Source: Mytilus californianus
Taxonomy: Eukaryota
Length of the DNA stretch: 64,000 nt
NCBI RefSeq assembly: GCF_021869535.1
Contig: NW_026262604.1
Coordinates: 6,138,001-6,202,000 of the forward strand
Direction: 5' to 3'
Shown here piece by piece: positions 1-64,000 of the stretch (position 1 is the first letter of the stretch; each line of letters starts with the position of its first letter). The notes below the pieces were generated by a model. That model had not been told where the DNA came from and searched no databases. It was given only the letters and a program-made list of their open reading frames with translations. The position numbers and the translations under genes are program-made.

Positions 1-845
1 GACACTGATCGATCTGATGACACTGATGTCAGCGAGTGTAGGTCGATTTTATTATTTTTGTTATGATCTGTTATAAATACGTAGTGCACATTTCCTTAGT
101 AATAGTATTTGTTATTTGCAGTCCAGTTCTTGTATAAAGTTTGAAATTATTATATAAAGTAGCATTGCTTACTCACATGCCGATTGCAATTATATTGTCG
201 TGACTGTGTGTATAAATAAAAAAAAATACAGGTATGGATTCAAAGGGCGATAACCACGAATTTATTTCTATGGAACACCCTTTGAACCCAAGTAACATTA
301 CTTTGCGTAACGCCGTTTAAATAGAGAACAGCAGATTAAGTTGGTCTTCACACTCGTAATTATTTGAAGAGTAGGGGCATTAGGCTATTGTAACTCGTTA
401 AATGTAAACTTTAAGATTGTTTTATTTTCTGAATATCATTTCTACATTTTTTTTCTAAGGCCCCTCTTTTAATTTCATGTAATATATAGGCCGTTGCCGT
501 CTTTAAGTTTTAGAATTTTTGACAATTATCTTCAACTTTGTGTGTGATTTCGACTCTCAATCTTTTTTTCTAGACAAACAGGCGTGGATCCAGCCATTTT
601 AAAAAGGGTGTTCCAACCCCCGGAACACTATATGAAACGTTCACATAATTAAAAAAATATTAATAAAAAAAAGTGCTCACGCTGAAATGTCCCACCTTCT
701 TTACTAACATTGATTCAATGTTGATAGAACTAAATATAACTATCACACAAACTTGACATGATCCATGAAAATAAGGTCAAGGTCATATGAACCAAACACG
801 AAATACATGTTCACCTGACAAGCATTCCATAAAGTTGACCTATTG

Positions 846-1051
846 ATTGATTGATTGATTTTTTGGTGTTTTAACGCCACTTTTAAGCCCCGCATTTAGG
901 CTATTTCGTGGCGGCCAGTTTTTATTGGTGGAGGAAGTCGGAGTGCCCGGAGAAAACCACCGACCTTCGATAGGAAAACTGACAATCCTAGTCAATTAAG
1001 ATTGGAGTAGAGTGCACCCGCGCACATGAGCGGGGTTCGAACTCTCCAGTT
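846..1051 (-). mobile_element. tRNA-derived SINE (V/Meta-domain type), 5'-truncated
   Basis: The minus strand reads a B-box GAGTTCGAACC, a central GGTTTTCTCCGGGCACTCCGACTTCCTCCACCAATAAAA and an (AATC)n tail. It is flanked by the 12-bp TSD GTTGACCTATTG (834-845 and 1052-1063). Confidence 0.85.
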
Positions 1052-1874
1052 GTTGACCTATTGCACATAGTATCTAAGAATTAAACTTAACTCGGAAAAT
1101 TTAGCATAGGTCAATTAACCATGAAAGTGAGGTCAAGGTCAGCTAGATGAACCCTGCCAGACAGATATGTACACCTTATGATCACTACATACTTTAAATA
1201 TAGTTGACGTATTGCATATATTGTCCTTAAAACAAACTCAACAAGAAAACTTAACATTTATTAATGAACCATGAAAATGAGGTCCAGGTCAAATGTACCT
1301 GCCAGACAGGCGTATACACCTTTTAATAATTCCATGCACCAAATAAAGTTGACCTATTGCTTAAAGTATAAGAAAATCAAAACACAAACATTTAACATTT
1401 ACCAACAAACCGTCAAAATGAGGTCAAGGTAAAAAAAAAACCTGCTAGACTGACATGTACATCGTGAAACCTTTTCATTTTCCAAATATAGTTGACTTAT
1501 TTCATATAGTATTAGGGAAACAGGCATTAACCCAAAAGATCAACTTAAACCACTGAACCATGAAAATGAGGTCAAGGTCAGACAACACCTGACAGTTTGC
1601 CATATGCACCTTTCAACCATTCCATACATCAAATATTATAGAAGACCTATTGCTCATAGTATCTCAGATAACGACTTGACCACGAAAACTTAACTTTGTT
1701 CACTGATCCATGAAATGAGGTAGAGGTTAGGTAAAAACTGACCAAATGGCAAGGTACGCACATACCAAACATAGTTATCCTATATCCCAAAATTAAAGAG
1801 AAATTACGATTTCTAAAAATCTTAAATTCTTAAGTACTCACCCTAACCAAGAAAATAAGGTCAAGAACAATATA

Positions 1875-2051
1875 CAGTGAAACCTGTTTAAACCGAACCT
1901 TTTCGAGACTAAACATTTTGTTCGGTGTAGGCTGATGTTCTGTGTTATCAGGTCTACAACGCATACAAATTGATATGGCGGTGCTTAAGAACATGTTTGT
2001 TTTATACAGGTTTTCGGTTTATGCAGGATTAGGTTTAGCCAGGTTTCACTG
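1875..2051. mobile_element. Tc1/mariner/pogo-type MITE
   Basis: 12-bp TIRs CAGTGAAACCTG / CAGGTTTCACTG with TA on both sides. Confidence 0.85.
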
Positions 2052-3409
2052 TACATATAACAGATGGATTCTTCATAGCATAAGACATTTATATTCAAAG
2101 TATGAAGGATCCAGGTCTTCTATCTTCTGAAATATTAAGCTTTTAAGAAGTTTGTCAAAACCACCGCCGCTGGATCAGTATCCCTTTTTCAAGCTTTCTG
2201 CGACAGAAGACGCACGACAAAAATGATGTCGATGTCCGAATCACCCTGCCAGACATCAGATACACATTGCAGTCACTCAATACACCAAATATATTTGACC
2301 TAGTACTTGAAGTATCTTAGGAAAGGTCATAACCATGAAAACTTAGCATTGACTAATTAACCGTTTGAGGTGAGCTCATGGTGATCTTAAACCTACAAGA
2401 CAATAATTCTCACATTATAATCATTCCATACATCAAATTTAAGTATAAAACGTGAAAAATAAACATTGTCAAATGAACCATGAAAATGGGGTCAAGGTCA
2501 TATAAAACCTACTAGTCGGACATGTACGTATACATCTTACAATCATTCCATACAGCAAATATAAGGACCGTACTGTCTGCTTAGAGTACCTGAGAAATTG
2601 ACAAAATTACAACAAGAGTGCACACGCTGAAATGTCTCACCTTCTTTATTGACCATTGATTCAATTTTGATAATCCCAAATATAAAGCTTTAATACATGC
2701 ATCACATAAACTTAATTAATCCAAGAAAATGAGGGAAAGGTCAGATAAACCAAACATGAATATAATGTTTACCTTACAATCATGTAATACACCAAACTTA
2801 GTTAACATATTGCTTATAGCTTCTAGGAAACAGATTTTACCAGGAAAACTAAACATTTACCAAGTGCAAGTGCAAGTAAACCATGCCAGAAAGACCTGTA
2901 CAAATTACAATCAATCTATGTGTTAAATATAGTTGCCCTATATTGCTTATAGTTTCTATGAAACAAACATCATCATGAAATCTCAACATTGACCAATGAT
3001 CCATGAAAATGAGGCTACGTCAGATGATACCTACCAGACAGGCATATACACCTTACAATAATTCCATACAACAGTTGATCTATTGGTCATAGTTTAAGAA
3101 AACCGACCAAAACAAAAAACCTTAACACTGCGTTATGAACCGTGAAAATGAGGTCATGGTCTAATAAAACCTGCTAGACTGACATGTACATCATAAAATA
3201 TTTCCATACACAATATTTTAGTCGAATTTTTGCATATAATGTAAGAAAAAAAGACCAAAACACAAAAACTTAACTTTGACCACTGAACTATAAAAATTAG
3301 GTCAGATGAAACCTGCCAGTTGGACATATACATCTAACAATCATTCCATACGCCAAATATAGTAAACAACTATTGCTTAAAGAATATGGTAAATGAACTT
3401 GACTTAATA

Positions 3410-3890
3410 GATATAAGAAGATGTTGTATGAGTGTCAATGAGACAAATATCCATCCAAGTCACAATTTATACAAGTAAACCCTTATAGGTCAAAGTACGG
3501 TCTTCAACACGGTGCCTTGGCCCACACTGATCAGTGATAAAGGGTCCGAAAAAATGACTAGTGTAAAACCATACAAACGGGAAACCAACGGTCTAATGTA
3601 AAAAAAAAAACGAGAAACTCGAAACACTTCAAACTACATCAACAAATGAATGGCCATCAGATTCCAGACTTAGGACATGTGCAAACAATTGCAGCGGGTG
3701 TAAACGTTTTAACAGGTACCAACCTTCACCCTTATCTGAAACAAAAGTGTAAGTTAAGCCTTTATCAACTTATTTATATAGCTCATTCTTATGTTGTACT
3801 GTAATACCACTGTCCCACGCAAGGGGAGGGTTGAAGTCACGCTAACATGTTTAACCCCGCCACATTCTGTATGGATGTACATAACATCCA
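3410..3890 (-). repeat. Interspersed SINE-like repeat; shorter related tails at ~12295-12780 (split), ~52110-52170 and ~63970-64000
   Basis: The shared motif AGAAGATGT(G/T)GTATGA(T/G)TG(C/T)CAATGAGACA, or its reverse complement, recurs at these positions. Confidence 0.55.
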
Positions 3891-5042
3891 CCAATGCAAA
3901 TAAATACGTAATTCATACTAGCATAAAATAACATATTCAATGAGTTTTGATTTTAACCATATACATAAACGCAGTTGGAAATTCGTTCATAATGATAATT
4001 CTATGTTCCATGTAATACTGTGTTATTTAGTGTTCTATGGTAGCATCGATAATATTTTTTTTCTGGTAGTAATTAGCGGTGATTTAGATATATAGTTTTG
4101 AAACTAAGAAATGGCGTCAATTAAAGACTGGCAAATCTGTTATCAATTGGGTAAATATACCCCCTCCCCCCCCCCAAAAAAAAGGTACAGACATCTTCTG
4201 AAGCTAATGTTTCATTTCAAATTCGAAAGGGTTGATTGGTTGATTGATTGTTGGTTGCTTAACATCTATAGGGAACGTGAACCATCGTGGAATTATTTTA
4301 CATATAGAATGGAAATGGGGAATAAGTCAGAGACAACAACCCGACCAAAGAGCAAACAACAGCCGAAGGCCACCATGCAATGGGTCTTAAATGCAGCGAG
4401 AAAATCCTGCACCCGGAGGAGGTCCTCAACTGTATAAGGCTTACGGTAGTTAATGAAAATACCAAACTTGGTAATCTAAATGTATGAACTTTATTTTAAT
4501 AAACAATACTTTTTGGATATACATCAGCTTTTATTAATTCTATTTACAACATTTAATACCAATATGTATTCTAATATTTGGCGCCATATATTAGGCAACA
4601 AATTCTTATTGACTTACATCATTATCTTGATATACATCATATATTAGTATAAGAATGTACATGGTGAAATGACTTGCCTTATTTACTAATCATCTATGTT
4701 ATGTTTATAGTCCTAACTATAAAGTTTTACTACAATTACCACATAAACATTAATACCTTGATCCAAGAAGATAAGGTCAAAGTCAGATAAACAAAACTAG
4801 AAATACATGAACACTTTAAGTTACATTACTTCCATATACCAAATTTGCTTTAATTATAGTTGAACTATTGCTCATTTAAGATAGAGTTTCATCAGGAAAT
4901 CTTAGCATTGATCAGATCAGTAACCATAAAAATGAGGCCAAGTTCAGCTGGACCCCTCCAGAAAGACGTGTAAACCTTACAATCTTTGCACGCGTTAGAT
5001 AAGGTGGACCTATTCAATATAGTATCCAAATAACACACTTAA

Positions 5043-5621
5043 AGTCATATGAAACTTCAAATAACAAAAAAAAATGATGCATATGTTTTTAATATCTAAA
5101 TAGCTAGTTTTTATATTACAACTTCTGAACATGTATTTTTTTCTAAAGATTTTTTTTTAATTTGTCCAAATTTAAAAGAAATTGACTTTTTTGTAATTCT
5201 TGGCTTCCAGTCAACAATTCGCCGACACGTTTTTTGTATGCGTGACCTTTCTCGTAGAAATCTGGTGATCGCAATACGCAAATGTGAAGGGGAAACCAAA
5301 CGTAAACACCGCTCAGTCATCAAAATAAACTATATCTTATTTTACATGTTATACACGTGCTAACATAATTCCATGCTTCTTTGTTGATTGTTTACAAAGG
5401 TGACAACCGGTAAACGTCGGTTTCAAAACACGACCATTAATCAGCTGCCATATTCTAACAACATCAATGACCGATTGGAATATTTTTTTGACGATTATAC
5501 GAAATGGATGCGTCAAAAAATGATGAAATCGTGCACAGGAGACTCAGTTTATGATATATGCATGCAATGTTTAAAGAATTGAATTGTTATAATTTTCAAT
5601 GGTCACGCATTTCGTATGACT
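5043..5621. mobile_element. Kolobok-like MITE (copy 1)
   Basis: TTAA|AGTCATATGAAAC ... ATTTCGTATGACT|TTAC. Imperfect TIR at a TTAA-type target. Confidence 0.6.
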
Positions 5622-5641
5622 TTACTCAGACAAAGTCTTAA

Positions 5642-6188
5642 AGTCATATGAAACGAGTGTCTGGTGAAAAATAATGTTTATCCAATTTTTGAACCAATGC
5701 TTGTTTATATATATCATAAACTTAGTCTTCCGTGCACGATTTTATTATTTTTTACGCAAACATTTCGTATAATCGTCATTTTTTTTTCTCTCTGACTGTA
5801 ATTGTGTGAAAATATGGCAGCTATTTAATTGTTGGGTTTTAAAGCCGTAGTTTGTCAACAATCAACAAAGAAGCATGATTATTGAGCACGTGTATAACAT
5901 GTACAATCAGGTAATAGTTTATTTAAATGACAGATCCATGCGTATTGCGATCACCGGATTTTTACGAGAAGGGTCACGATGAGGTCACTTACTTACCGAT
6001 AATGTGTCGGCGAATTGCTTCCTGAAAGCAAGCAATTAAAAAAAAGAAAACGTCTTCTGAATGTGGACAAATTAAAGAATTTTCTTCGGAAAAAAGTATA
6101 TGTACATAGGTTTTATAATGAAAACTATCCATTTTGTTATAAAAAACATATGCATCATTTTTGTTTTAATTTGAGGTTTCATATGACT
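5642..6188. mobile_element. Kolobok-like MITE (copy 2)
   Basis: TTAA|AGTCATATGAAAC ... GTTTCATATGACT|TCAA. Perfect 13-bp TIR. Confidence 0.7.
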
Positions 6189-6982
6189 TCAAGTATCAAA
6201 CTAAAGATTGATCATTGAAGTATGAAAATTAGTCATGGTCAGACGAAAAAACTGCTGGACAAACATATACACCTAACAATCATTCGATACGCTAAATATA
6301 CTTTATCTTATGATTATTATTTTAGAAAAACAGACCAAAACACAAAAACATAACTTTAACCACTGAACCATGAAAATGACATCAAGGTCAACTGACACCT
6401 GCCAGTTAGACAAATCATTCCATACACCAAAATATAGTAGACCTACTCCTTATAGTATCTGAGATATTGACTTTACCACGAAAACTTATCCTTGTTCTCT
6501 GATCTATTAAATGAGGTCGAGGTCAAGTGAAACTGTCTGACGTGTATGAGGACATTGCAAGGTAGGCACATGCCAAACACATTTATAATATAAGAAATTA
6601 AGAATATTAAACGAAAATCTTAGCTTTTTTTCAAGAAGTCACTGAACCATGAAACTGAGGTAAGAGACAGTGGACATATGACGGAGAAAAACTTCATAAT
6701 ATTAGGCATCTATATTCAACATGTACATAGTATGAAGGCCCAAGTCTTCTACGTACTGAAATATAACGTTTGAAGAAGTGTGTTAACGCCGCAGTGGCCG
6801 TCGCCGCCAGATCACTATCCCTTTGTCGAGCTTTCTTGCTTGCGACAGAAGTTGCAGAATCGACATACATGTGAATTTAGATATCAGTGTACAAGTTTGA
6901 TACAAAGTAGCATGATCTTGTATCCTTTTATGTGGCAAAAGTTCATTCTCAGCATTTTTTCATGTATCATATCCTACATGTC

Positions 6983-9044
6983 CTAATGCGGTAATTTACA
7001 TATATGTGTCTGTGAATTCATAAACTGACTAAATCCTCTTCCACATACATCACATTTAAAAGGTTTATCACCGGTGTGTATTCTGATATGGGTCTTTCTG
7101 ATCTGTACACAACTAAATCCTTTACCACATATACCACATTTATAAGGTTTATCACCGGTGTGTATTCTCATATGGGCTCTTATGATCTGTGCACGACTAA
7201 ACCCTTTACCACATACATCACATTTATAAGGTTTATCACCAGTATGTATTCTCATGTATATCTGTAAGTTATGACTATCAAAGTAACTTTTACTGCATTC
7301 GTCACATTTATAAGGTTTATTTTCATGTGTATCCGTAAGCTATAACTATCAAAGTAACTTTTACTGCATTCGTCACATTTATACTTTTTTCATCAGTATG
7401 CAAAGTACTGTGTCTCTGTAAGCTATCACTATGACTGAACCTTTCACCACATACATCACATTTATAAGGTTTATCACCGGTGTGTGTTCTCATATGGGTG
7501 CTCATGCTCTGTACAAAACTAAATTCTCTTCCACATAAATCAGATATAAAAGGTTTATCACCAGTGTGTATTGTCATGTGTCTCTGTAAACCAGTTAATC
7601 GCATAAAAACTTTTTCACATACATCACATTTATAAGGTTTATCTCCAGCATGAGTTCTCATGTGTGCTTGTAGATTACGATTCTGCATAAACTCTTTACC
7701 ACATACATCACAATGCTATGGTTTATCATCTGTATGTAATTTCATGTGTTGCAATAAGCTACATTTTTTATTAAACTCTTTACCACACACTTTACATACA
7801 CAAGGTTTATCCCCGGCGTGTGTTCTCATGTGTTTCTGTAAACAATGAGTATGCCTAAAAACTTTTTCACATACATTACATGTATAAGGTTTCTCTCCAG
7901 TGTGTATTCTCATGTGTGCTTTTAAATTACCTTTCTGCCTAAAGTCTTTACCACATACATCACATTGATATGGTTTATCATCTGTATGTAATTTCATGTG
8001 TTGCAATAATCTACATTTTTTTCTAAACTCTTTAGCACAAAATTTACATTTAGAAGGTCTATCCCCGGTGTGTGTTCTCATGTGTTTCTTTAAGCCATGA
8101 ATATATCCAAAAACTTTTTCACATACATCACATTTATAAGGTTTATCTCCAGTATGAGTTCTCATGTGTGCTTGTAGATTACCATTCTGCCTAAACGCCT
8201 TACCACATACATCACATTTAAAAGGTTTATCACCTGTATGTGTTCTCATATGGGTCCTCATGCTCTGTCCAAAACTAAATTCTCTTCCACATACATCACA
8301 TTTATAAGGTGTATCTCCAGTGTGTATTTTTATGTGTGCCTGTAAGGTATCTATCCGACTAAATTTTTTGCCACACATATCACACTCATAAGATTTATCA
8401 CCAGTGTGTATTGTCATGTGTCTCTGTAAACTATTTAATTGCACAAAAACTTTTTCACATACATCACATTTATAAGGTTTATCTCCAGAATGAGTTCTCA
8501 TGTGTGTTCGTAAATTACCATTCTGCCTAAACTCTTTACCACATACACCACAATGATATGGTTTATCACCTGTATGCAATTTCATATGTTGCAATAAGTT
8601 AAAACTTTGACTAAACTCCTTACATTTATAAGGCGTATCACCAGTGTGTGTTCTCATGTGTATTTCTAAACCATGATTTGTACTCAATCCTTTATAACAT
8701 ATATCACATTTAAATATGTTGAAAGTCTTTTTATCAATGTGTGATCTCATATGCACCTTCAGATTTGTACCATTACTGCAACGTTTACCACACACTTCAC
8801 ATTCATAGTAATTTTCGCCTGTATTTAAGATGAAGTGTTCCTTTGACTTGTCTGTTGTCTTAACATCGCCTGTATTTAAGATGAAGTGTTCCTTTGACTT
8901 GTCTGTTGTCTTAACATCGCCTGCATTTAAGATGAAGTATTCCTTTGACTTGTCTGTATTTAAGATGAAGTGTTCCTTTGACTTGTCTGTTGTCTTAACA
9001 AGGGAGATCATCATGGTATCAGCTGTATTTTCGTTGTTAGACAT
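6983..9044 (-). pseudogene. C2H2 zinc-finger gene A (~22 finger units); disrupted, or translated only as a truncated 442-aa product (7716-9044)
   Basis: Tandem CxxC-x12-H-x3-H fingers with TGDKP linkers. In-frame TAG at 7716-7718 where TAT is expected, with fingers continuing in the same frame. A 1-bp loss in the A-run near 7385 and a ~13-bp deletion near 7320 shift the frame. It ends with the same terminal finger as paralog B (FSQFMNSQTHIC). Confidence 0.9.
8821..9000. repeat. In-frame coding minisatellite (51+51+33 bp extra units) in the N-terminus of ZNF A
   Basis: The unit GTATTTAAGATGAAGTGTTCCTTTGACTTGTCTGTTGTCTTAACATCGCCT encodes repeated KTTDKSKEHFILNTGDV. Paralog B has a single copy. 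Confidence 0.95.
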
Positions 9045-55858: not shown

Positions 55859-56201
55859 AATAGACTATTTTCATATTACCGACTTTTGACTCCGGATTAT
55901 ATAATTTGTCGACTGGTTACCTTGGACATCATGGTACTCGGTCAAGTAAGAGCAACCAAAATAAGTAAAATCAAACATATAATCGGTGTAATTTGAGGGG
56001 AAAGTTTATTGTTTTCCGATGATTTTGTAGTGAAAAAAAAATGTTAAGCAGGTAATTTCCCCCCAAAATTGTACCGATTGAACGCTTGGTTTTACTTCTT
56101 TAGCTTGCTCTTACCTGACTTGGTACCATGATGTCCAAGGTAACCAGTCGACAAATTATATAATCCGGAGTCCAAAGTCGGTATTATGAAAATAGTCTAT
56201 T
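55859..56201. mobile_element. ~340-bp foldback element with ~100-bp near-perfect arms
   Basis: AATAGACTATTTTCAT..GTCGACTGGTTACCTTGGACATCATGGTAC / GTACCATGATGTCCAAGGTAACCAGTCGAC..ATGAAAATAGTCTATT. No TSD found. Confidence 0.75.
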
Positions 56202-56365
56202 GTTTGTCACAAGGCTCACAAGCATATATATGTGAAATTTTAAGAGGAAATGATGTACAGAAGAGTGTTTTGAATACACAAGTATAACCAAAGGATAATT
56301 TACATTTAGCAATGAAAAAGGTAACATTGTGCAACAATTGGCTATTTTTATAAGCTTATAAGATC

Positions 56366-56398
56366 CAGGGACTTTCTATATAGTATAGAAAGTCCCTG
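56366..56398. mobile_element. 33-bp TIR-only palindrome with 7-bp TSD (P-element-like excision footprint, copy 1)
   Basis: TAAGATC|CAGGGACTTTCTATAT-AGTATAGAAAGTCCCTG|TAAGATC. Confidence 0.8.
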
Positions 56399-56409
56399 TA
56401 AGATCTTAT

Positions 56410-58530
56410 AAACCCTCGCGGACATGACTGATCTCAAATTTAGCAATTGCTTTAAAACAACTTCTTATAAAATTTGTAAAAAATATGACAATTTAATGAT
56501 AATAGGAGATGTGAATTTTAATAAGATATATGAACATAAAAGTTCATTTTTAATTGATACATGTGACATTTTTTATCTTTAAAATTTAGTTCAAAAAACT
56601 ACTTCTTAACAAATACCATATATGAACAAGAAATGATTGTAACAGGATGCTGTTACGAAGTCTCCCAAACGAAGCTCCCATAATTCGTAATTCCAAGGGT
56701 CGTCTGACATTGGGCAAAGTCCAGTGAAAATTGGTTTGGTAAAGTTATATGCAGTAGTGATGCCTGGGGACTAACCCTGTATATCATTCAAATCATCTTG
56801 GCATGACAAACCAGAATATATATGGTTTAGGGGTGGTGATCTCGACCACTTACAAGATACTAAAACATTGGGGGTGGGGGGAACCCCTGGGGACCGACCC
56901 TATACGTCATTCAAATGTTCGCGACATGACAAACAGGAATATATATGGTTTAGGGGTGGGGATCTCGACCATTTACAAGATATTAGAACATTGGGGGTGG
57001 GGGGAACCCCTGGGGACTGACCCAATACGTCATTCAAATGTTTGAGACATGACGAACAGGAATATATATGGTTTAGGGGTGGGGATCTCGACCATTTACA
57101 AGATATTAGAACTTTCTCAAATGGCAGGGGGTGGGGGATGGCCCCTGGGGACTAACCCTGTATATCATTCAAACCATCTTTGCATGACAAACCAGAATAT
57201 ATATGGTTTAGGGGTGGGGATCTCGACCACTTACAAGATACTAAAACATTGGGGGTGGGGGGAACCCCTGGAGACCGACCCTATACGTCATTCAAATGTT
57301 TGCGACATGACAAACAGGAATATATATGGTTTAGGGGTGGGGATCTCGACCATTTACAAGATATTAGAACATTGGGGGTGGGGGGAACCCCTGGGGACTG
57401 ACCCAATACGTCATTCAAATGTTTGAGACATGACGAACAGGAATATATATGGTTTAGGGGTGGGGATCTCGACCATTTACAAGATATTAGAACTTTCTCA
57501 AATGGCAGGGGGTGGGGGATGGCCCCTGGGGACTAACCCTGTATATCATTCAAACCATCTTTGCATGACAAACCAGAATATATATGGTTTAGGGGTGGGG
57601 ATCTTGACCACTTACAAGATATTAGAGCTTTCTTAAATGGCAGGGGGGGTGGTGACCCCTGGGGAATAACCCTGTATTTCATTTGATTTGCTTTATAATG
57701 ACAAACCAGAATATATATGGTTTAGGGTGGGGATCTCGACCATTTACAAGATATTAGAACTTTCTCAAATGGCAGGGGGTCGGGATGACCTCTTGGGACT
57801 AACCCTGTATATCTTTCAAATTATCTTAGCATGACAAACCAGAATATATATGGTTTAGGAGTGGGGATCTTGACCACTTACAAGATATTAGAACTTTCTT
57901 AAATGGCAGGGGGTGGGGGTGACCCCTGGGGACTAACCCTGTATATCATTCAAACCATCTTTGCATGACAAACCAGAATATATATGGTTTAGGGGTGGGG
58001 ATCTTGACCACTTACAAGATATTAGAACTTTCTTAAATGGCAGGGGTGGGGTGACCCCTGGGGACTAACCCTGTATATCATTCAAACCATCTTTGCATGA
58101 CAAACCAGAATATATATGGTTTAGGGGTGGGGATCTTGACCACTTACAAGATATTATGTTTTTCTTAAATGGCAGGGGGTGGGGTGACCCCTGGGACTAA
58201 CCCTCTATTTTATCTAATGTGCTTTATCATTTAGAACATTTTCAATTAAAAAGATTGTGTCTATCACAAATGGTTTTCAATTTATAATCATTTGAAAATT
58301 TAAAAAATAAAATCCCATAGGGTTCTATAGTAAAACCCTCCTTTCTTTTCGCCCCTCAAAGTACCCCTTTATAAACCCTATTGCACAAACAAAACCCTGA
58401 TTGCACCACTAGACATGTTAGTCTAACATATTGTGAAACCCTAAGTTAATCTGACTAGCGGTTTTGGAGAACGGGTGCGGACAAGTTCAAATTTAAAAGC
58501 GGCGGAAGAGGAAGAGGAAGATGAAGAAGA
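56410..58530 (+). mobile_element. HINE-type element with a G-rich 123-135-bp array including a 381-bp higher-order repeat
   Basis: Repeated GGGACTAACCCTGTATATCATTC..GGTTTAGGGGTGGGGATCTCGACC. The 381-bp period is visible in ORF starts 57049 and 57430. (GAA)n-type tail. Confidence 0.75.
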
Positions 58531-63280: not shown

Positions 63281-63744
63281 CCGGAGCCTCACAACTTTGG
63301 AACAGTTTTAATATTTTCATGATTTCAACATAGTGTTCTTCAGAAGACTGCTTTTGTAGCTCATGTACACAATAACTTTGCTGTCTCACAGCTGAAATCT
63401 TCTAGCCCGCCAGTGTTCTGTTTCATGATTGTTTGCTTTTGTTTTATTTATTTGCTATAGCTTTTGTCTTTGTGCCAGTTAAAGTAAAACATGTCTTTTC
63501 TTTTCTTTTTAGCTTGCTTGCATTTATTTATGCATGTTTGCTTAGCTATTATATATATTATGCATACATATGTTTTATTTGTATATATGTAGACAGGCTG
63601 TCAAATGATCTCAAATGTGCTTATAATTTGTTATTTGTGGGTTTTTTTTTTTAATATCTAGTTGGTTCAGAGCTCTACAGAGCTCATGATTACTGTGCTA
63701 AATTATACATATCATGCCGACTCTCAATAAAATCTACTTACTAC

Positions 63745-63778
63745 CAGGGACTTTCTATACTAGTATAGAAAGTCCCTG
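63745..63778. mobile_element. 34-bp perfect palindrome (17+17) with 7-bp TSD (P-element-like excision footprint, copy 2)
   Basis: TTACTAC|CAGGGACTTTCTATACT-AGTATAGAAAGTCCCTG|TTACTAT (TSD matches 6 of 7). Confidence 0.8.
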
Positions 63779-64000
63779 TTACTATACTTACTTATTTCTT
63801 ACTTACATTTAGTAAAGGAAACACTATTGTTAACTTTGTGCTCCATAGGTACATTTATTTAAAATTGATTATCGCCCTTCAACGGAATATGTAGATTGTC
63901 GCGCATCATTGCAAAGCAAAGAACTTTGAACTGCTTGAAGGTTTGTTAATTAATTAATATCATTGATTTTATAAATAGAAATAAGATGTGGTTCGAGTGC

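What the first reader, a model, noticed from the sequence alone, without database searches (positions are those of the whole stretch)
56359..56405. P-element-type excision footprint, copy 1: 16+17 bp of TIR between a perfect 7-bp TSD
Seen: TAAGATC-[CAGGGACTTTCTATAT|AGTATAGAAAGTCCCTG]-TAAGATC. The same palindrome occurs 7.4 kb away in unrelated flanks. Established: Drosophila P transposase cuts with a 17-nt stagger, so end-joining leaves about 15-18 bp of each TIR at the donor site, and P-superfamily elements have CANRG termini and 7-8-bp TSDs. Inference: this is the germline scar of a P-like element, implying that the unusual 17-nt staggered cleavage operates in this mollusc-like lineage. Alternatives are a 34-bp mobile mini-element or an hATw-type (7-bp TSD) derivative.
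Basis: partly seen in the sequence, partly recalled or inferred. Interest (0 to 1): 0.8.

Follow-up and report, generated by a model that had tools for sequence, protein, structure and literature searches.

The report
Transposon excision scar in mussel DNA
This 33-letter near-palindrome between two copies of TAAGATC is most likely the scar left when a small jumping gene related to the fruit-fly P element cut itself out of a mussel chromosome. It is one of about 250 such scars, which together record where that family's enzyme cuts DNA.

Summary
TAAGATC, a 33-bp near-palindrome and TAAGATC sit at 56359-56405, and a 34-bp perfect palindrome lies 7.4 kb away.

The arms are the first 15 and 18 nt of a 33-bp terminal inverted repeat (TIR). 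That TIR bounds a ~600-bp non-coding transposon family (at least 40 copies, 7-bp target duplications) in this 1.65-Gb mussel genome.

About 250 short relics of 30-60 bp carry the same tips, but only 4 measure 61-90 bp. Their centres differ widely (20 junctions among 22 loci in one complete class). Nearly all checked have 7-bp duplications. Their arms stop at TIR position 20, just before GGGACT.

I did not find the family's own transposase. Its TIR is 26/32 identical to that of a family encoding a P-type transposase. That family has 436 relics, and a second P family has 245.

Best reading: an excision scar of a P-superfamily element, repaired by end joining. The stagger here appears to be about 20 nt, not 17. 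The 17+17 form is what 20-nt overhangs give when they pair at a TA.

The scan reached the same reading on other DNA of this genome (s1-314015, s1-287925, s1-333284, s1-330654).

The parts
56359..56365 (.). Left copy of the 7-bp target-site duplication, TAAGATC
   Evidence: It is identical to 56399-56405. Seven-bp duplications flank nearly all relics and all intact MITEs of the family that I checked.
56366..56380 (+). Left arm: TIR positions 1-15 (CAGGGACTTTCTATA)
   Evidence: It is identical to the first 15 nt of the MITE TIR CAGGGACTTTCTATACTAACGGGACTSGTC.
56381..56398 (-). Right arm: reverse complement of TIR positions 1-18 (TAGTATAGAAAGTCCCTG)
   Evidence: There are no mismatches to the TIR, and no filler lies between the arms.
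56399..56405 (.). Right copy of the 7-bp target-site duplication, TAAGATC
63738..63785 (.). Second relic of the same family: TTACTAC, a 34-bp perfect palindrome (17+17) and TTACTAT
   Evidence: The same CTAG junction recurs at four other loci with different flanks and different arm variants.
56340..56607 (+). Low-copy host repeat in which the relic sits. Two paralogues (L059, L060; 87% identical) lack the relic.
   Evidence: In the paralogues, GGCTATTTTTAGGAGCTTACAAACCCCCGG runs straight across the site.

Best explanation
The 47 bp are the donor-site scar of a cut-and-paste transposon of the P superfamily. A ~600-bp non-autonomous element (TIR CAGGGACTTTCTATACTAAC|GGGACT...) inserted at TAAGATC and duplicated those 7 bp. 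A P-type transposase supplied in trans later excised it.

Such a transposase cuts the 3' strand at the element tip and the 5' strand well inside the TIR. Here that inner cut falls about 20 nt in, immediately 5' of the GGG. Each flank therefore keeps a long 3' overhang made of TIR sequence. End joining trimmed these overhangs to 15 and 18 nt and ligated them between the two target copies.

Shown here: the structure, the family, the length peak, the junction diversity, the 20-nt arm limit, and TIR homology to elements that encode P transposase. Inferred: the excision event itself, the strand chemistry (by analogy with Drosophila P), and which transposase acted.
For: (1) Longer elements carry the same tips. 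At least 40 MITE copies of ~600 bp at 81-98% identity have 33-bp TIRs and 7-bp TSDs. Three longer TSD-flanked copies are MITEs with unrelated nested inserts.

(2) The size distribution is bimodal. There are 156 + 72 + 22 = 250 relics of 30-60 bp, only 4 of 61-90 bp, and then the ~600-bp MITEs.

(3) The centres vary although the arms are intact. There are 20 different junctions among all 22 AGT/AGT loci and dozens among the 72 TTT/AGT loci. These include unequal arms and fillers of 1-18 nt.

(4) Junction classes that recur with the same flanks lie inside other repeats. Classes that recur with different flanks also occur on different arm variants, for example CTAG on TT/AA, AG/AA and TT/CT. They therefore formed independently.

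(5) Arms reach TIR position 20 very often: 13 of the 22 AGT/AGT loci have at least one 20-nt arm. They almost never pass it: 1 of 72 and 1 of 22.

(6) One-sided derivatives keep a long arm on one side and only 16-20 nt on the other (L071, L075, L069, L078).

(7) Two families that encode P transposase show the same behaviour. Both carry PF21787, the GTP-binding insertion domain PF21788, and PF21789. Both have 7-bp TSDs. They have 245 and 436 relics. In the L055 family the two ends differ, and its relics are left-end prefix (up to 19 nt) plus right-end prefix (up to 17 nt).

(8) The MITE TIR is 26/32 identical to the family-B TIR, z about 7 against shuffles.

(9) From the literature: Drosophila P makes a 17-nt staggered cut (PMC7776569), and Galileo, a P-superfamily element, makes 7-bp TSDs (PMC4168063).
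Against: No autonomous element with this exact TIR was found. None of the 51 + 95 P-transposase hits lies near a listed TIR of this family.

Similarity to family B is confined to the TIR. Beyond 33 nt, z is 1.7 or less. Similarity to the L055 TIR is not significant.

No allele or orthologue with the full element or a clean empty site could be examined. The two paralogues that lack the relic also lack a further ~10 bp, so they are not a clean empty site.

Listings were capped at 100 rows, so two of the three arm classes were sampled, not exhausted.
Confidence: 0.8

Rival explanations
1. It is a self-mobile 'TIR-only' micro-transposon. A 33-40-bp palindrome is itself cut and pasted by the transposase, and each copy makes its own 7-bp TSD.
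For: Every copy has its own TSD. Some junctions recur at unrelated loci: CTAG, CTAACTAG and CTAACGTTAG, and several classes in family B.
Against: Centres differ at most independent loci while the arms are intact. The recurring junctions are the simplest joins of 20-nt overhangs: full retention, loss of 1 nt, or pairing at a TA. They occur on different arm variants, so they do not descend from one copy. The relics lack everything from GGGACT inward. Drosophila P needs 138 and 216 bp of its ends to move (cited in PMC1562414).
Confidence: 0.08
2. It is a scar, but of a non-P element (hAT-like or an unclassified superfamily) that merely shares CAGGG tips.
For: CAGGG fits the hAT terminal pattern, as I recall it. 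No transposase gene was found inside an element with this exact TIR.
Against: The TSD is 7 bp. The TIR is 81% identical over 32 nt to that of an element encoding the P-specific GTP-binding insertion domain. hAT and MULE excision proceeds through hairpins on the flanks (PMC5499845) and leaves flank-derived palindromes, not 15-20 nt of each TIR.
Confidence: 0.05
3. It is an in-place internal deletion of a resident MITE, by replication slippage or by aborted gap repair copying from a sister copy. It is not a direct joining of staggered ends.
For: A few derivatives keep 40-140 nt of one end and four units measure 61-90 bp, so gap repair does occur in this family.
Against: Random deletion or synthesis end-points would give a smooth length spread. 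The TIR match runs to 33 nt, yet arms pile up at exactly 20 and stop. The limit is specific to each end in the other families: 19, 19 and 17 nt.
Confidence: 0.07

Closest known systems
Drosophila P-element excision footprints (17-nt staggered cleavage followed by end joining)
   Same: Both target copies are kept. Between them lie only prefixes of the two TIRs, of about 15-20 nt each, with variable trimming, use of microhomology and short fillers. The inner cut lies just 5' of an RGG: Drosophila ...ACATA^AGGTGG (TIR sequence from PMC11368186; stagger from PMC7776569), and here ...CTAAC^GGGACT.
   Different: The TSD is 7 bp, not 8. The arm limit is 20 nt, not 17. These scars are old, germline-fixed and number in the hundreds in a mollusc genome, whereas the Drosophila ones are laboratory events. 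The chemistry here is inferred, not assayed.
P-MITEs of Anopheles gambiae and BuT5 of Drosophila (non-autonomous P derivatives)
   Same: They are short, non-coding elements with P-type TIRs, the TSD length of their P partners, and internal sequence unrelated to the transposase gene (PMC1562414, PMC3698922).
   Different: Those families have identified autonomous partners with matching ends. Here the nearest P element shares only 26 of 32 TIR positions.
Galileo and 1360 (P superfamily, Drosophila)
   Same: They make 7-bp TSDs (PMC4168063).
   Different: Galileo has very long foldback-like TIRs. No genome-wide relic class is described for it in the papers I read.

Membership tests
P superfamily (for the parent element) | Target-site duplication of 7-8 bp | tested here: met
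   Intact MITEs have 7 bp: CTTCCAC, TCCCAGG, GGTAGGT and GTATATG. Of 21 relics, 16 match 7/7, 3 match 6/7 and 2 match 5/7. This locus has TAAGATC on both sides.
P superfamily (for the parent element) | Mobilised by a transposase with an RNase H fold interrupted by a GTP-binding insertion domain, shown by an autonomous copy with the same ends | tested here: inconclusive
   No coding element with this exact TIR was found. The closest TIR, 26/32 identical with z about 7, belongs to family B, which carries PF21787, PF21788 and PF21789.
P superfamily (for the parent element) | Long staggered donor cleavage, so that about 17 nt of each TIR stay at the donor site | tested here: met
   This is indirect evidence. 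Relic arms pile up at 20 nt and stop there. The same holds at 19, 19 and 17 nt for the two P-encoding families. No biochemical assay was done.
P superfamily (for the parent element) | THAP DNA-binding domain in the transposase | not tested
   Only the catalytic exons of L055 and L082 were scanned.
Excision footprint (as opposed to a mobile unit) | Junctions differ between independent loci while the arms are conserved | tested here: met
   There are 20 junctions in 22 loci. This locus's junction was unique among the 50 loci listed.
Excision footprint (as opposed to a mobile unit) | A filled or empty allele at the same site in another individual or species | not testable with these tools
   Exact-protein look-ups and a metagenome scan found nothing. 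Paralogues lack the relic, but the comparison is not clean.
hAT superfamily | 8-bp TSD and flank-derived (hairpin) footprints | tested here: not met
   The TSD is 7 bp. The relic is made of TIR sequence, not of flank palindromes.

The most novel reading that the evidence does not exclude
In P-superfamily transposases the inner (5'-strand) cut is placed by sequence, immediately 5' of an RGG motif in the TIR, and not by a fixed 17-nt ruler. Four different mussel TIR ends have relic arms that stop at 20, 19, 19 and 17 nt. Each limit falls at N^RGG, as in Drosophila P (ACATA^AGGTGG). If this holds, the roughly 900 relics counted here for three families are a natural archive of P-transposase cut sites and of germline end-joining outcomes in a mollusc.
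Probability: 0.4. Interest if true: 0.7.

Novelty: new member of a known kind. Interest (0 to 1): 0.5.

Why it matters
The long staggered cut is the hallmark oddity of the Drosophila P transposase. In the papers I could search it has been measured only for that enzyme. These scars are indirect but plentiful evidence that distant P relatives in a bivalve cut in the same unusual way.

They also suggest that the offset varies from 17 to 20 nt with the position of an RGG motif. That gives a concrete prediction for a cleavage assay. The scars further offer hundreds of natural germline repair junctions for studying end joining in a non-model animal.

For genome annotation, these 30-45-bp palindromes should be labelled as transposon scars, not as the smallest known mobile elements.

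Tried and rejected
(1) Long TSD-flanked elements with these TIRs (L051 4.8 kb, L052 2.2 kb, L053 8.4 kb) have no long ORFs, no Pfam hits and no shared interior. They are MITEs with nested inserts, not autonomous copies.

(2) P-transposase loci L054, L055 and L056 have no copy of this TIR within 10 kb. An inverted-repeat scan gave no flanking TIRs for L054 or L056.

It has no such TIR.

(4) Twenty unpaired long-TIR ends were all MITEs or deletion derivatives. L063 diverges after 33 nt and was not followed.

(5) L035, a tip followed by non-palindromic DNA, has no matching right end.

(6) The allele test failed. Two ORFs next to the scar are not on record elsewhere. A 23-nt flank gave no hit in metagenome contigs.

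TSDs of family-B relics were therefore not read. I did not try to get flanks by another route.

(8) Subterminal similarity between the MITE and family B looked suggestive by eye but is not significant.

(9) I found no paper describing genome-wide P-type scars in any animal. The library is incomplete, so this is weak evidence of novelty.

Full report
**The observation**

The window reads TAAGATC (56359-56365), then CAGGGACTTTCTATATAGTATAGAAAGTCCCTG (56366-56398), then TAAGATC (56399-56405). A perfect 34-bp palindrome with the same arms lies at 63745-63778, between TTACTAC and TTACTAT, in unrelated flanks. The 15-nt arm occurs four times in the window against 0.16 expected.

The window is C24:6138001-6202000 of a 1.65-Gb, 175-contig animal genome. 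Earlier notes of the scan call it the California mussel. In that genome the 15-mer occurs 830 times, against once for the reversed control.

**The family**

Nearly all of the first 50 places are short palindromes of 25-43 bp. Each has its own 7-bp direct repeat, and their centres differ. The same tips also bound a ~600-bp non-coding element:
- Its TIRs are 33 bp: CAGGGAC[TT/AG]TCTATACTAACGGGACTSGTC...
- Its TSDs are perfect 7-bp repeats.
- At least 40 full copies exist at 81-98% identity.
- 129 ends carry at least 26 nt of the TIR.

Three longer TSD-flanked copies (4.8, 2.2 and 8.4 kb) are this MITE with unrelated nested inserts. They have no long ORFs, no Pfam hits and no shared interior. So longer elements do share the TIR, but I found no coding one.

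**Size distribution and junctions**

I counted units whose two arms each match the 15-nt tip exactly.

| Arm class or size | Loci |
|---|---|
| TTT/TTT arms, 30-60 bp | 156 |
| TTT/AGT arms, 30-60 bp | 72 |
| AGT/AGT arms, 30-60 bp | 22 |
| Any arms, 61-90 bp | 4 |

MITEs exist with all three arm combinations. The centres are highly diverse. There are 20 junctions among the 22 AGT/AGT loci, which is a complete list, and dozens among the 72 mixed-arm loci. They include unequal arms and fillers of 1-18 nt.

Junction classes that recur with identical flanks sit inside other repeats and were copied along with them. Classes that recur with different flanks and perfect TSDs also occur on different arm variants. 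Examples are CTAG (the 17+17 form), CTAACTAG and CTAACGTTAG. They are therefore repeated outcomes, not descendants of one mobile copy.

Against the family TIR, whose position 16 is C, the flagged copy parses exactly as TIR[1-15] plus the reverse complement of TIR[1-18]. Its junction was unique among the 50 loci listed.

**The arm limit**

The TIR continues ...CTAAC(20)|GGGACT. Arms very often reach position 20: 13 of the 22 AGT/AGT loci have at least one 20-nt arm. They almost never pass it. The exceptions are one of 72 loci and one of 22.

The rare longer derivatives are one-sided: 42+16, 40+20, 128+filler+18 and 142+filler+20. That is the pattern expected if one broken end copied from a sister element before joining, while the other kept only its overhang.

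A perfect 17+17 palindrome is what two 20-nt overhangs give if they pair at T17-A18 and lose their 2-nt flaps. Copy 2 therefore does not by itself show a 17-nt stagger.

**Link to P transposase**

The genome has 51 matches to the P-transposase RNase H domain PF21787 and 95 matches to one such protein. None lies next to a listed TIR of this family. Two P families were characterised.

- **The L055 family.** It has five copies at 99% identity. The L055 element spans 244-8037, has the TSD CGGTAAT and begins CAAGGACGTATA. One exon carries PF21787, the GTP-binding insertion domain PF21788, and PF21789. Its two ends differ after position 12. Its 245 short relics are left-end prefix (modal limit 19 nt...CTAACA) plus right-end prefix (modal limit 17 nt...TTAGA).
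- **Family B.** L082 carries the same three domains. These lie inside an element whose ends are defined by the internally deleted copy L088, with TSD CACCAAA. Its TIR, CTGGGACTATTATACTAACGGGACTGGAAAC, is 26/32 identical to the MITE TIR (z about 7 against shuffles). It has 436 relics with very diverse centres and arms that stop at ...CTAAC (19 nt).

Similarity between the MITE and family B does not extend beyond the TIR. Similarity between the MITE and the L055 TIR is not significant. [quoted passage not shown]

**Comparison with what is known**

Drosophila P transposase makes an unusually long 17-nt staggered cut, and the donor break is repaired by end joining or by homologous repair (PMC7776569, PMC10983969). 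The P TIR begins CATGATGAAATAACATAAGGTGG (PMC11368186), so that cut falls at ACATA^AGG.

The four mussel limits fall at C^GGG, C^GGG, A^AGG and A^AGG. This suggests that the inner cut tracks an RGG motif and not a fixed distance. That is an inference from four ends.

Seven-bp TSDs are known in the P superfamily, in Galileo (PMC4168063). MULE and hAT excision goes through flank hairpins (PMC5499845), which would not leave TIR prefixes. Drosophila P needs over 100 bp of each end to move (cited in PMC1562414), which argues against mobility of 33-40-bp units.

**Empty-site evidence**

The scar sits in a low-copy repeat. Two paralogues (87% identical) run straight across the site without it. They also lack a further ~10 bp (GATCTTATAA) and contain no TAAGATC, so this is not a clean empty site.

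No other individual could be examined. I could not test that claim.

**Verdict**

- The flagged locus is a real scar of a cut-and-paste element. It is very probably a P-superfamily MITE, excised with a long stagger and repaired by end joining (confidence about 0.8).
- The 17-nt figure should be read as 'about 20 nt in this family' (confidence about 0.6).
- The locus is one of some 250 in its family, and the scan has reported the same kind of scar elsewhere in this genome.
- The wider pattern of end-specific limits at N^RGG across three families is the part worth following up.

Noticed in passing
window 56350-56415, compared with L059:370-440 and L060 (reverse strand): With the scar and one TSD removed, the site still holds about 10 bp that the two paralogues lack (GATCTTATAA). 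This creates a 16-bp palindrome, TTATAAGATCTTATAA, which can also be read as two copies of CTTATAA separated by GAT. It could be an older, almost fully trimmed 7-bp-TSD scar at the same spot, or a slippage duplication.
   Followed up: partly
window 55859-56201: There are two inverted ~142-bp arms (87% alike) about 60 bp apart. They belong to a very high-copy foldback or MITE-like repeat. More than 1,200 first-look candidates were found, and many are 97-99% identical.
   Followed up: no
G000:C24:58733606-58733903 (L104); G000:C1:131297367-131297695 (L033); window 56366 and 63745: Scars of this family occur in close pairs: about 220-250 bp apart in L104 and L033, and 7.4 kb apart in the window. 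Each has its own TSD. This would fit local re-insertion, which is known for P elements, but I did not test the clustering against chance, and duplicates made by host repeats confound it.
   Followed up: partly
for example G000:C1:64726940-64726976 and at least 13 other places: An identical 37-bp unit, CAAGGACGTATATCAATTTAGATTATATACGTCCTTG, recurs at many loci. Its centre does not match either end of the L055 element. It may lie in a host repeat, derive from another subfamily, or be a truly mobile unit.
   Followed up: no
L071, L075, L069, L078; G000:C88:23513969-23514034: These are one-sided deletion derivatives of the MITE. One end keeps 40-142 nt and the other only 16-20 nt. This is the pattern expected from one-ended gap-repair synthesis followed by end joining.
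   Followed up: partly
L055:769-2232 (+): The young 7.8-kb P element carries a second 487-aa ORF, on the strand opposite the transposase exon, with no Pfam match.
   Followed up: no
L054 (G000:C165:50969000-50978999) and L056 (G000:C121:88881000-88890999): Two paralogous loci carry P-transposase open frames of 893 aa (intact in L054; interrupted by one stop in L056, leaving 862 aa open). They are 74% identical to L055. No recognisable TIRs lie within 10 kb, so they may be domesticated THAP9-like genes or very large elements.
   Followed up: partly
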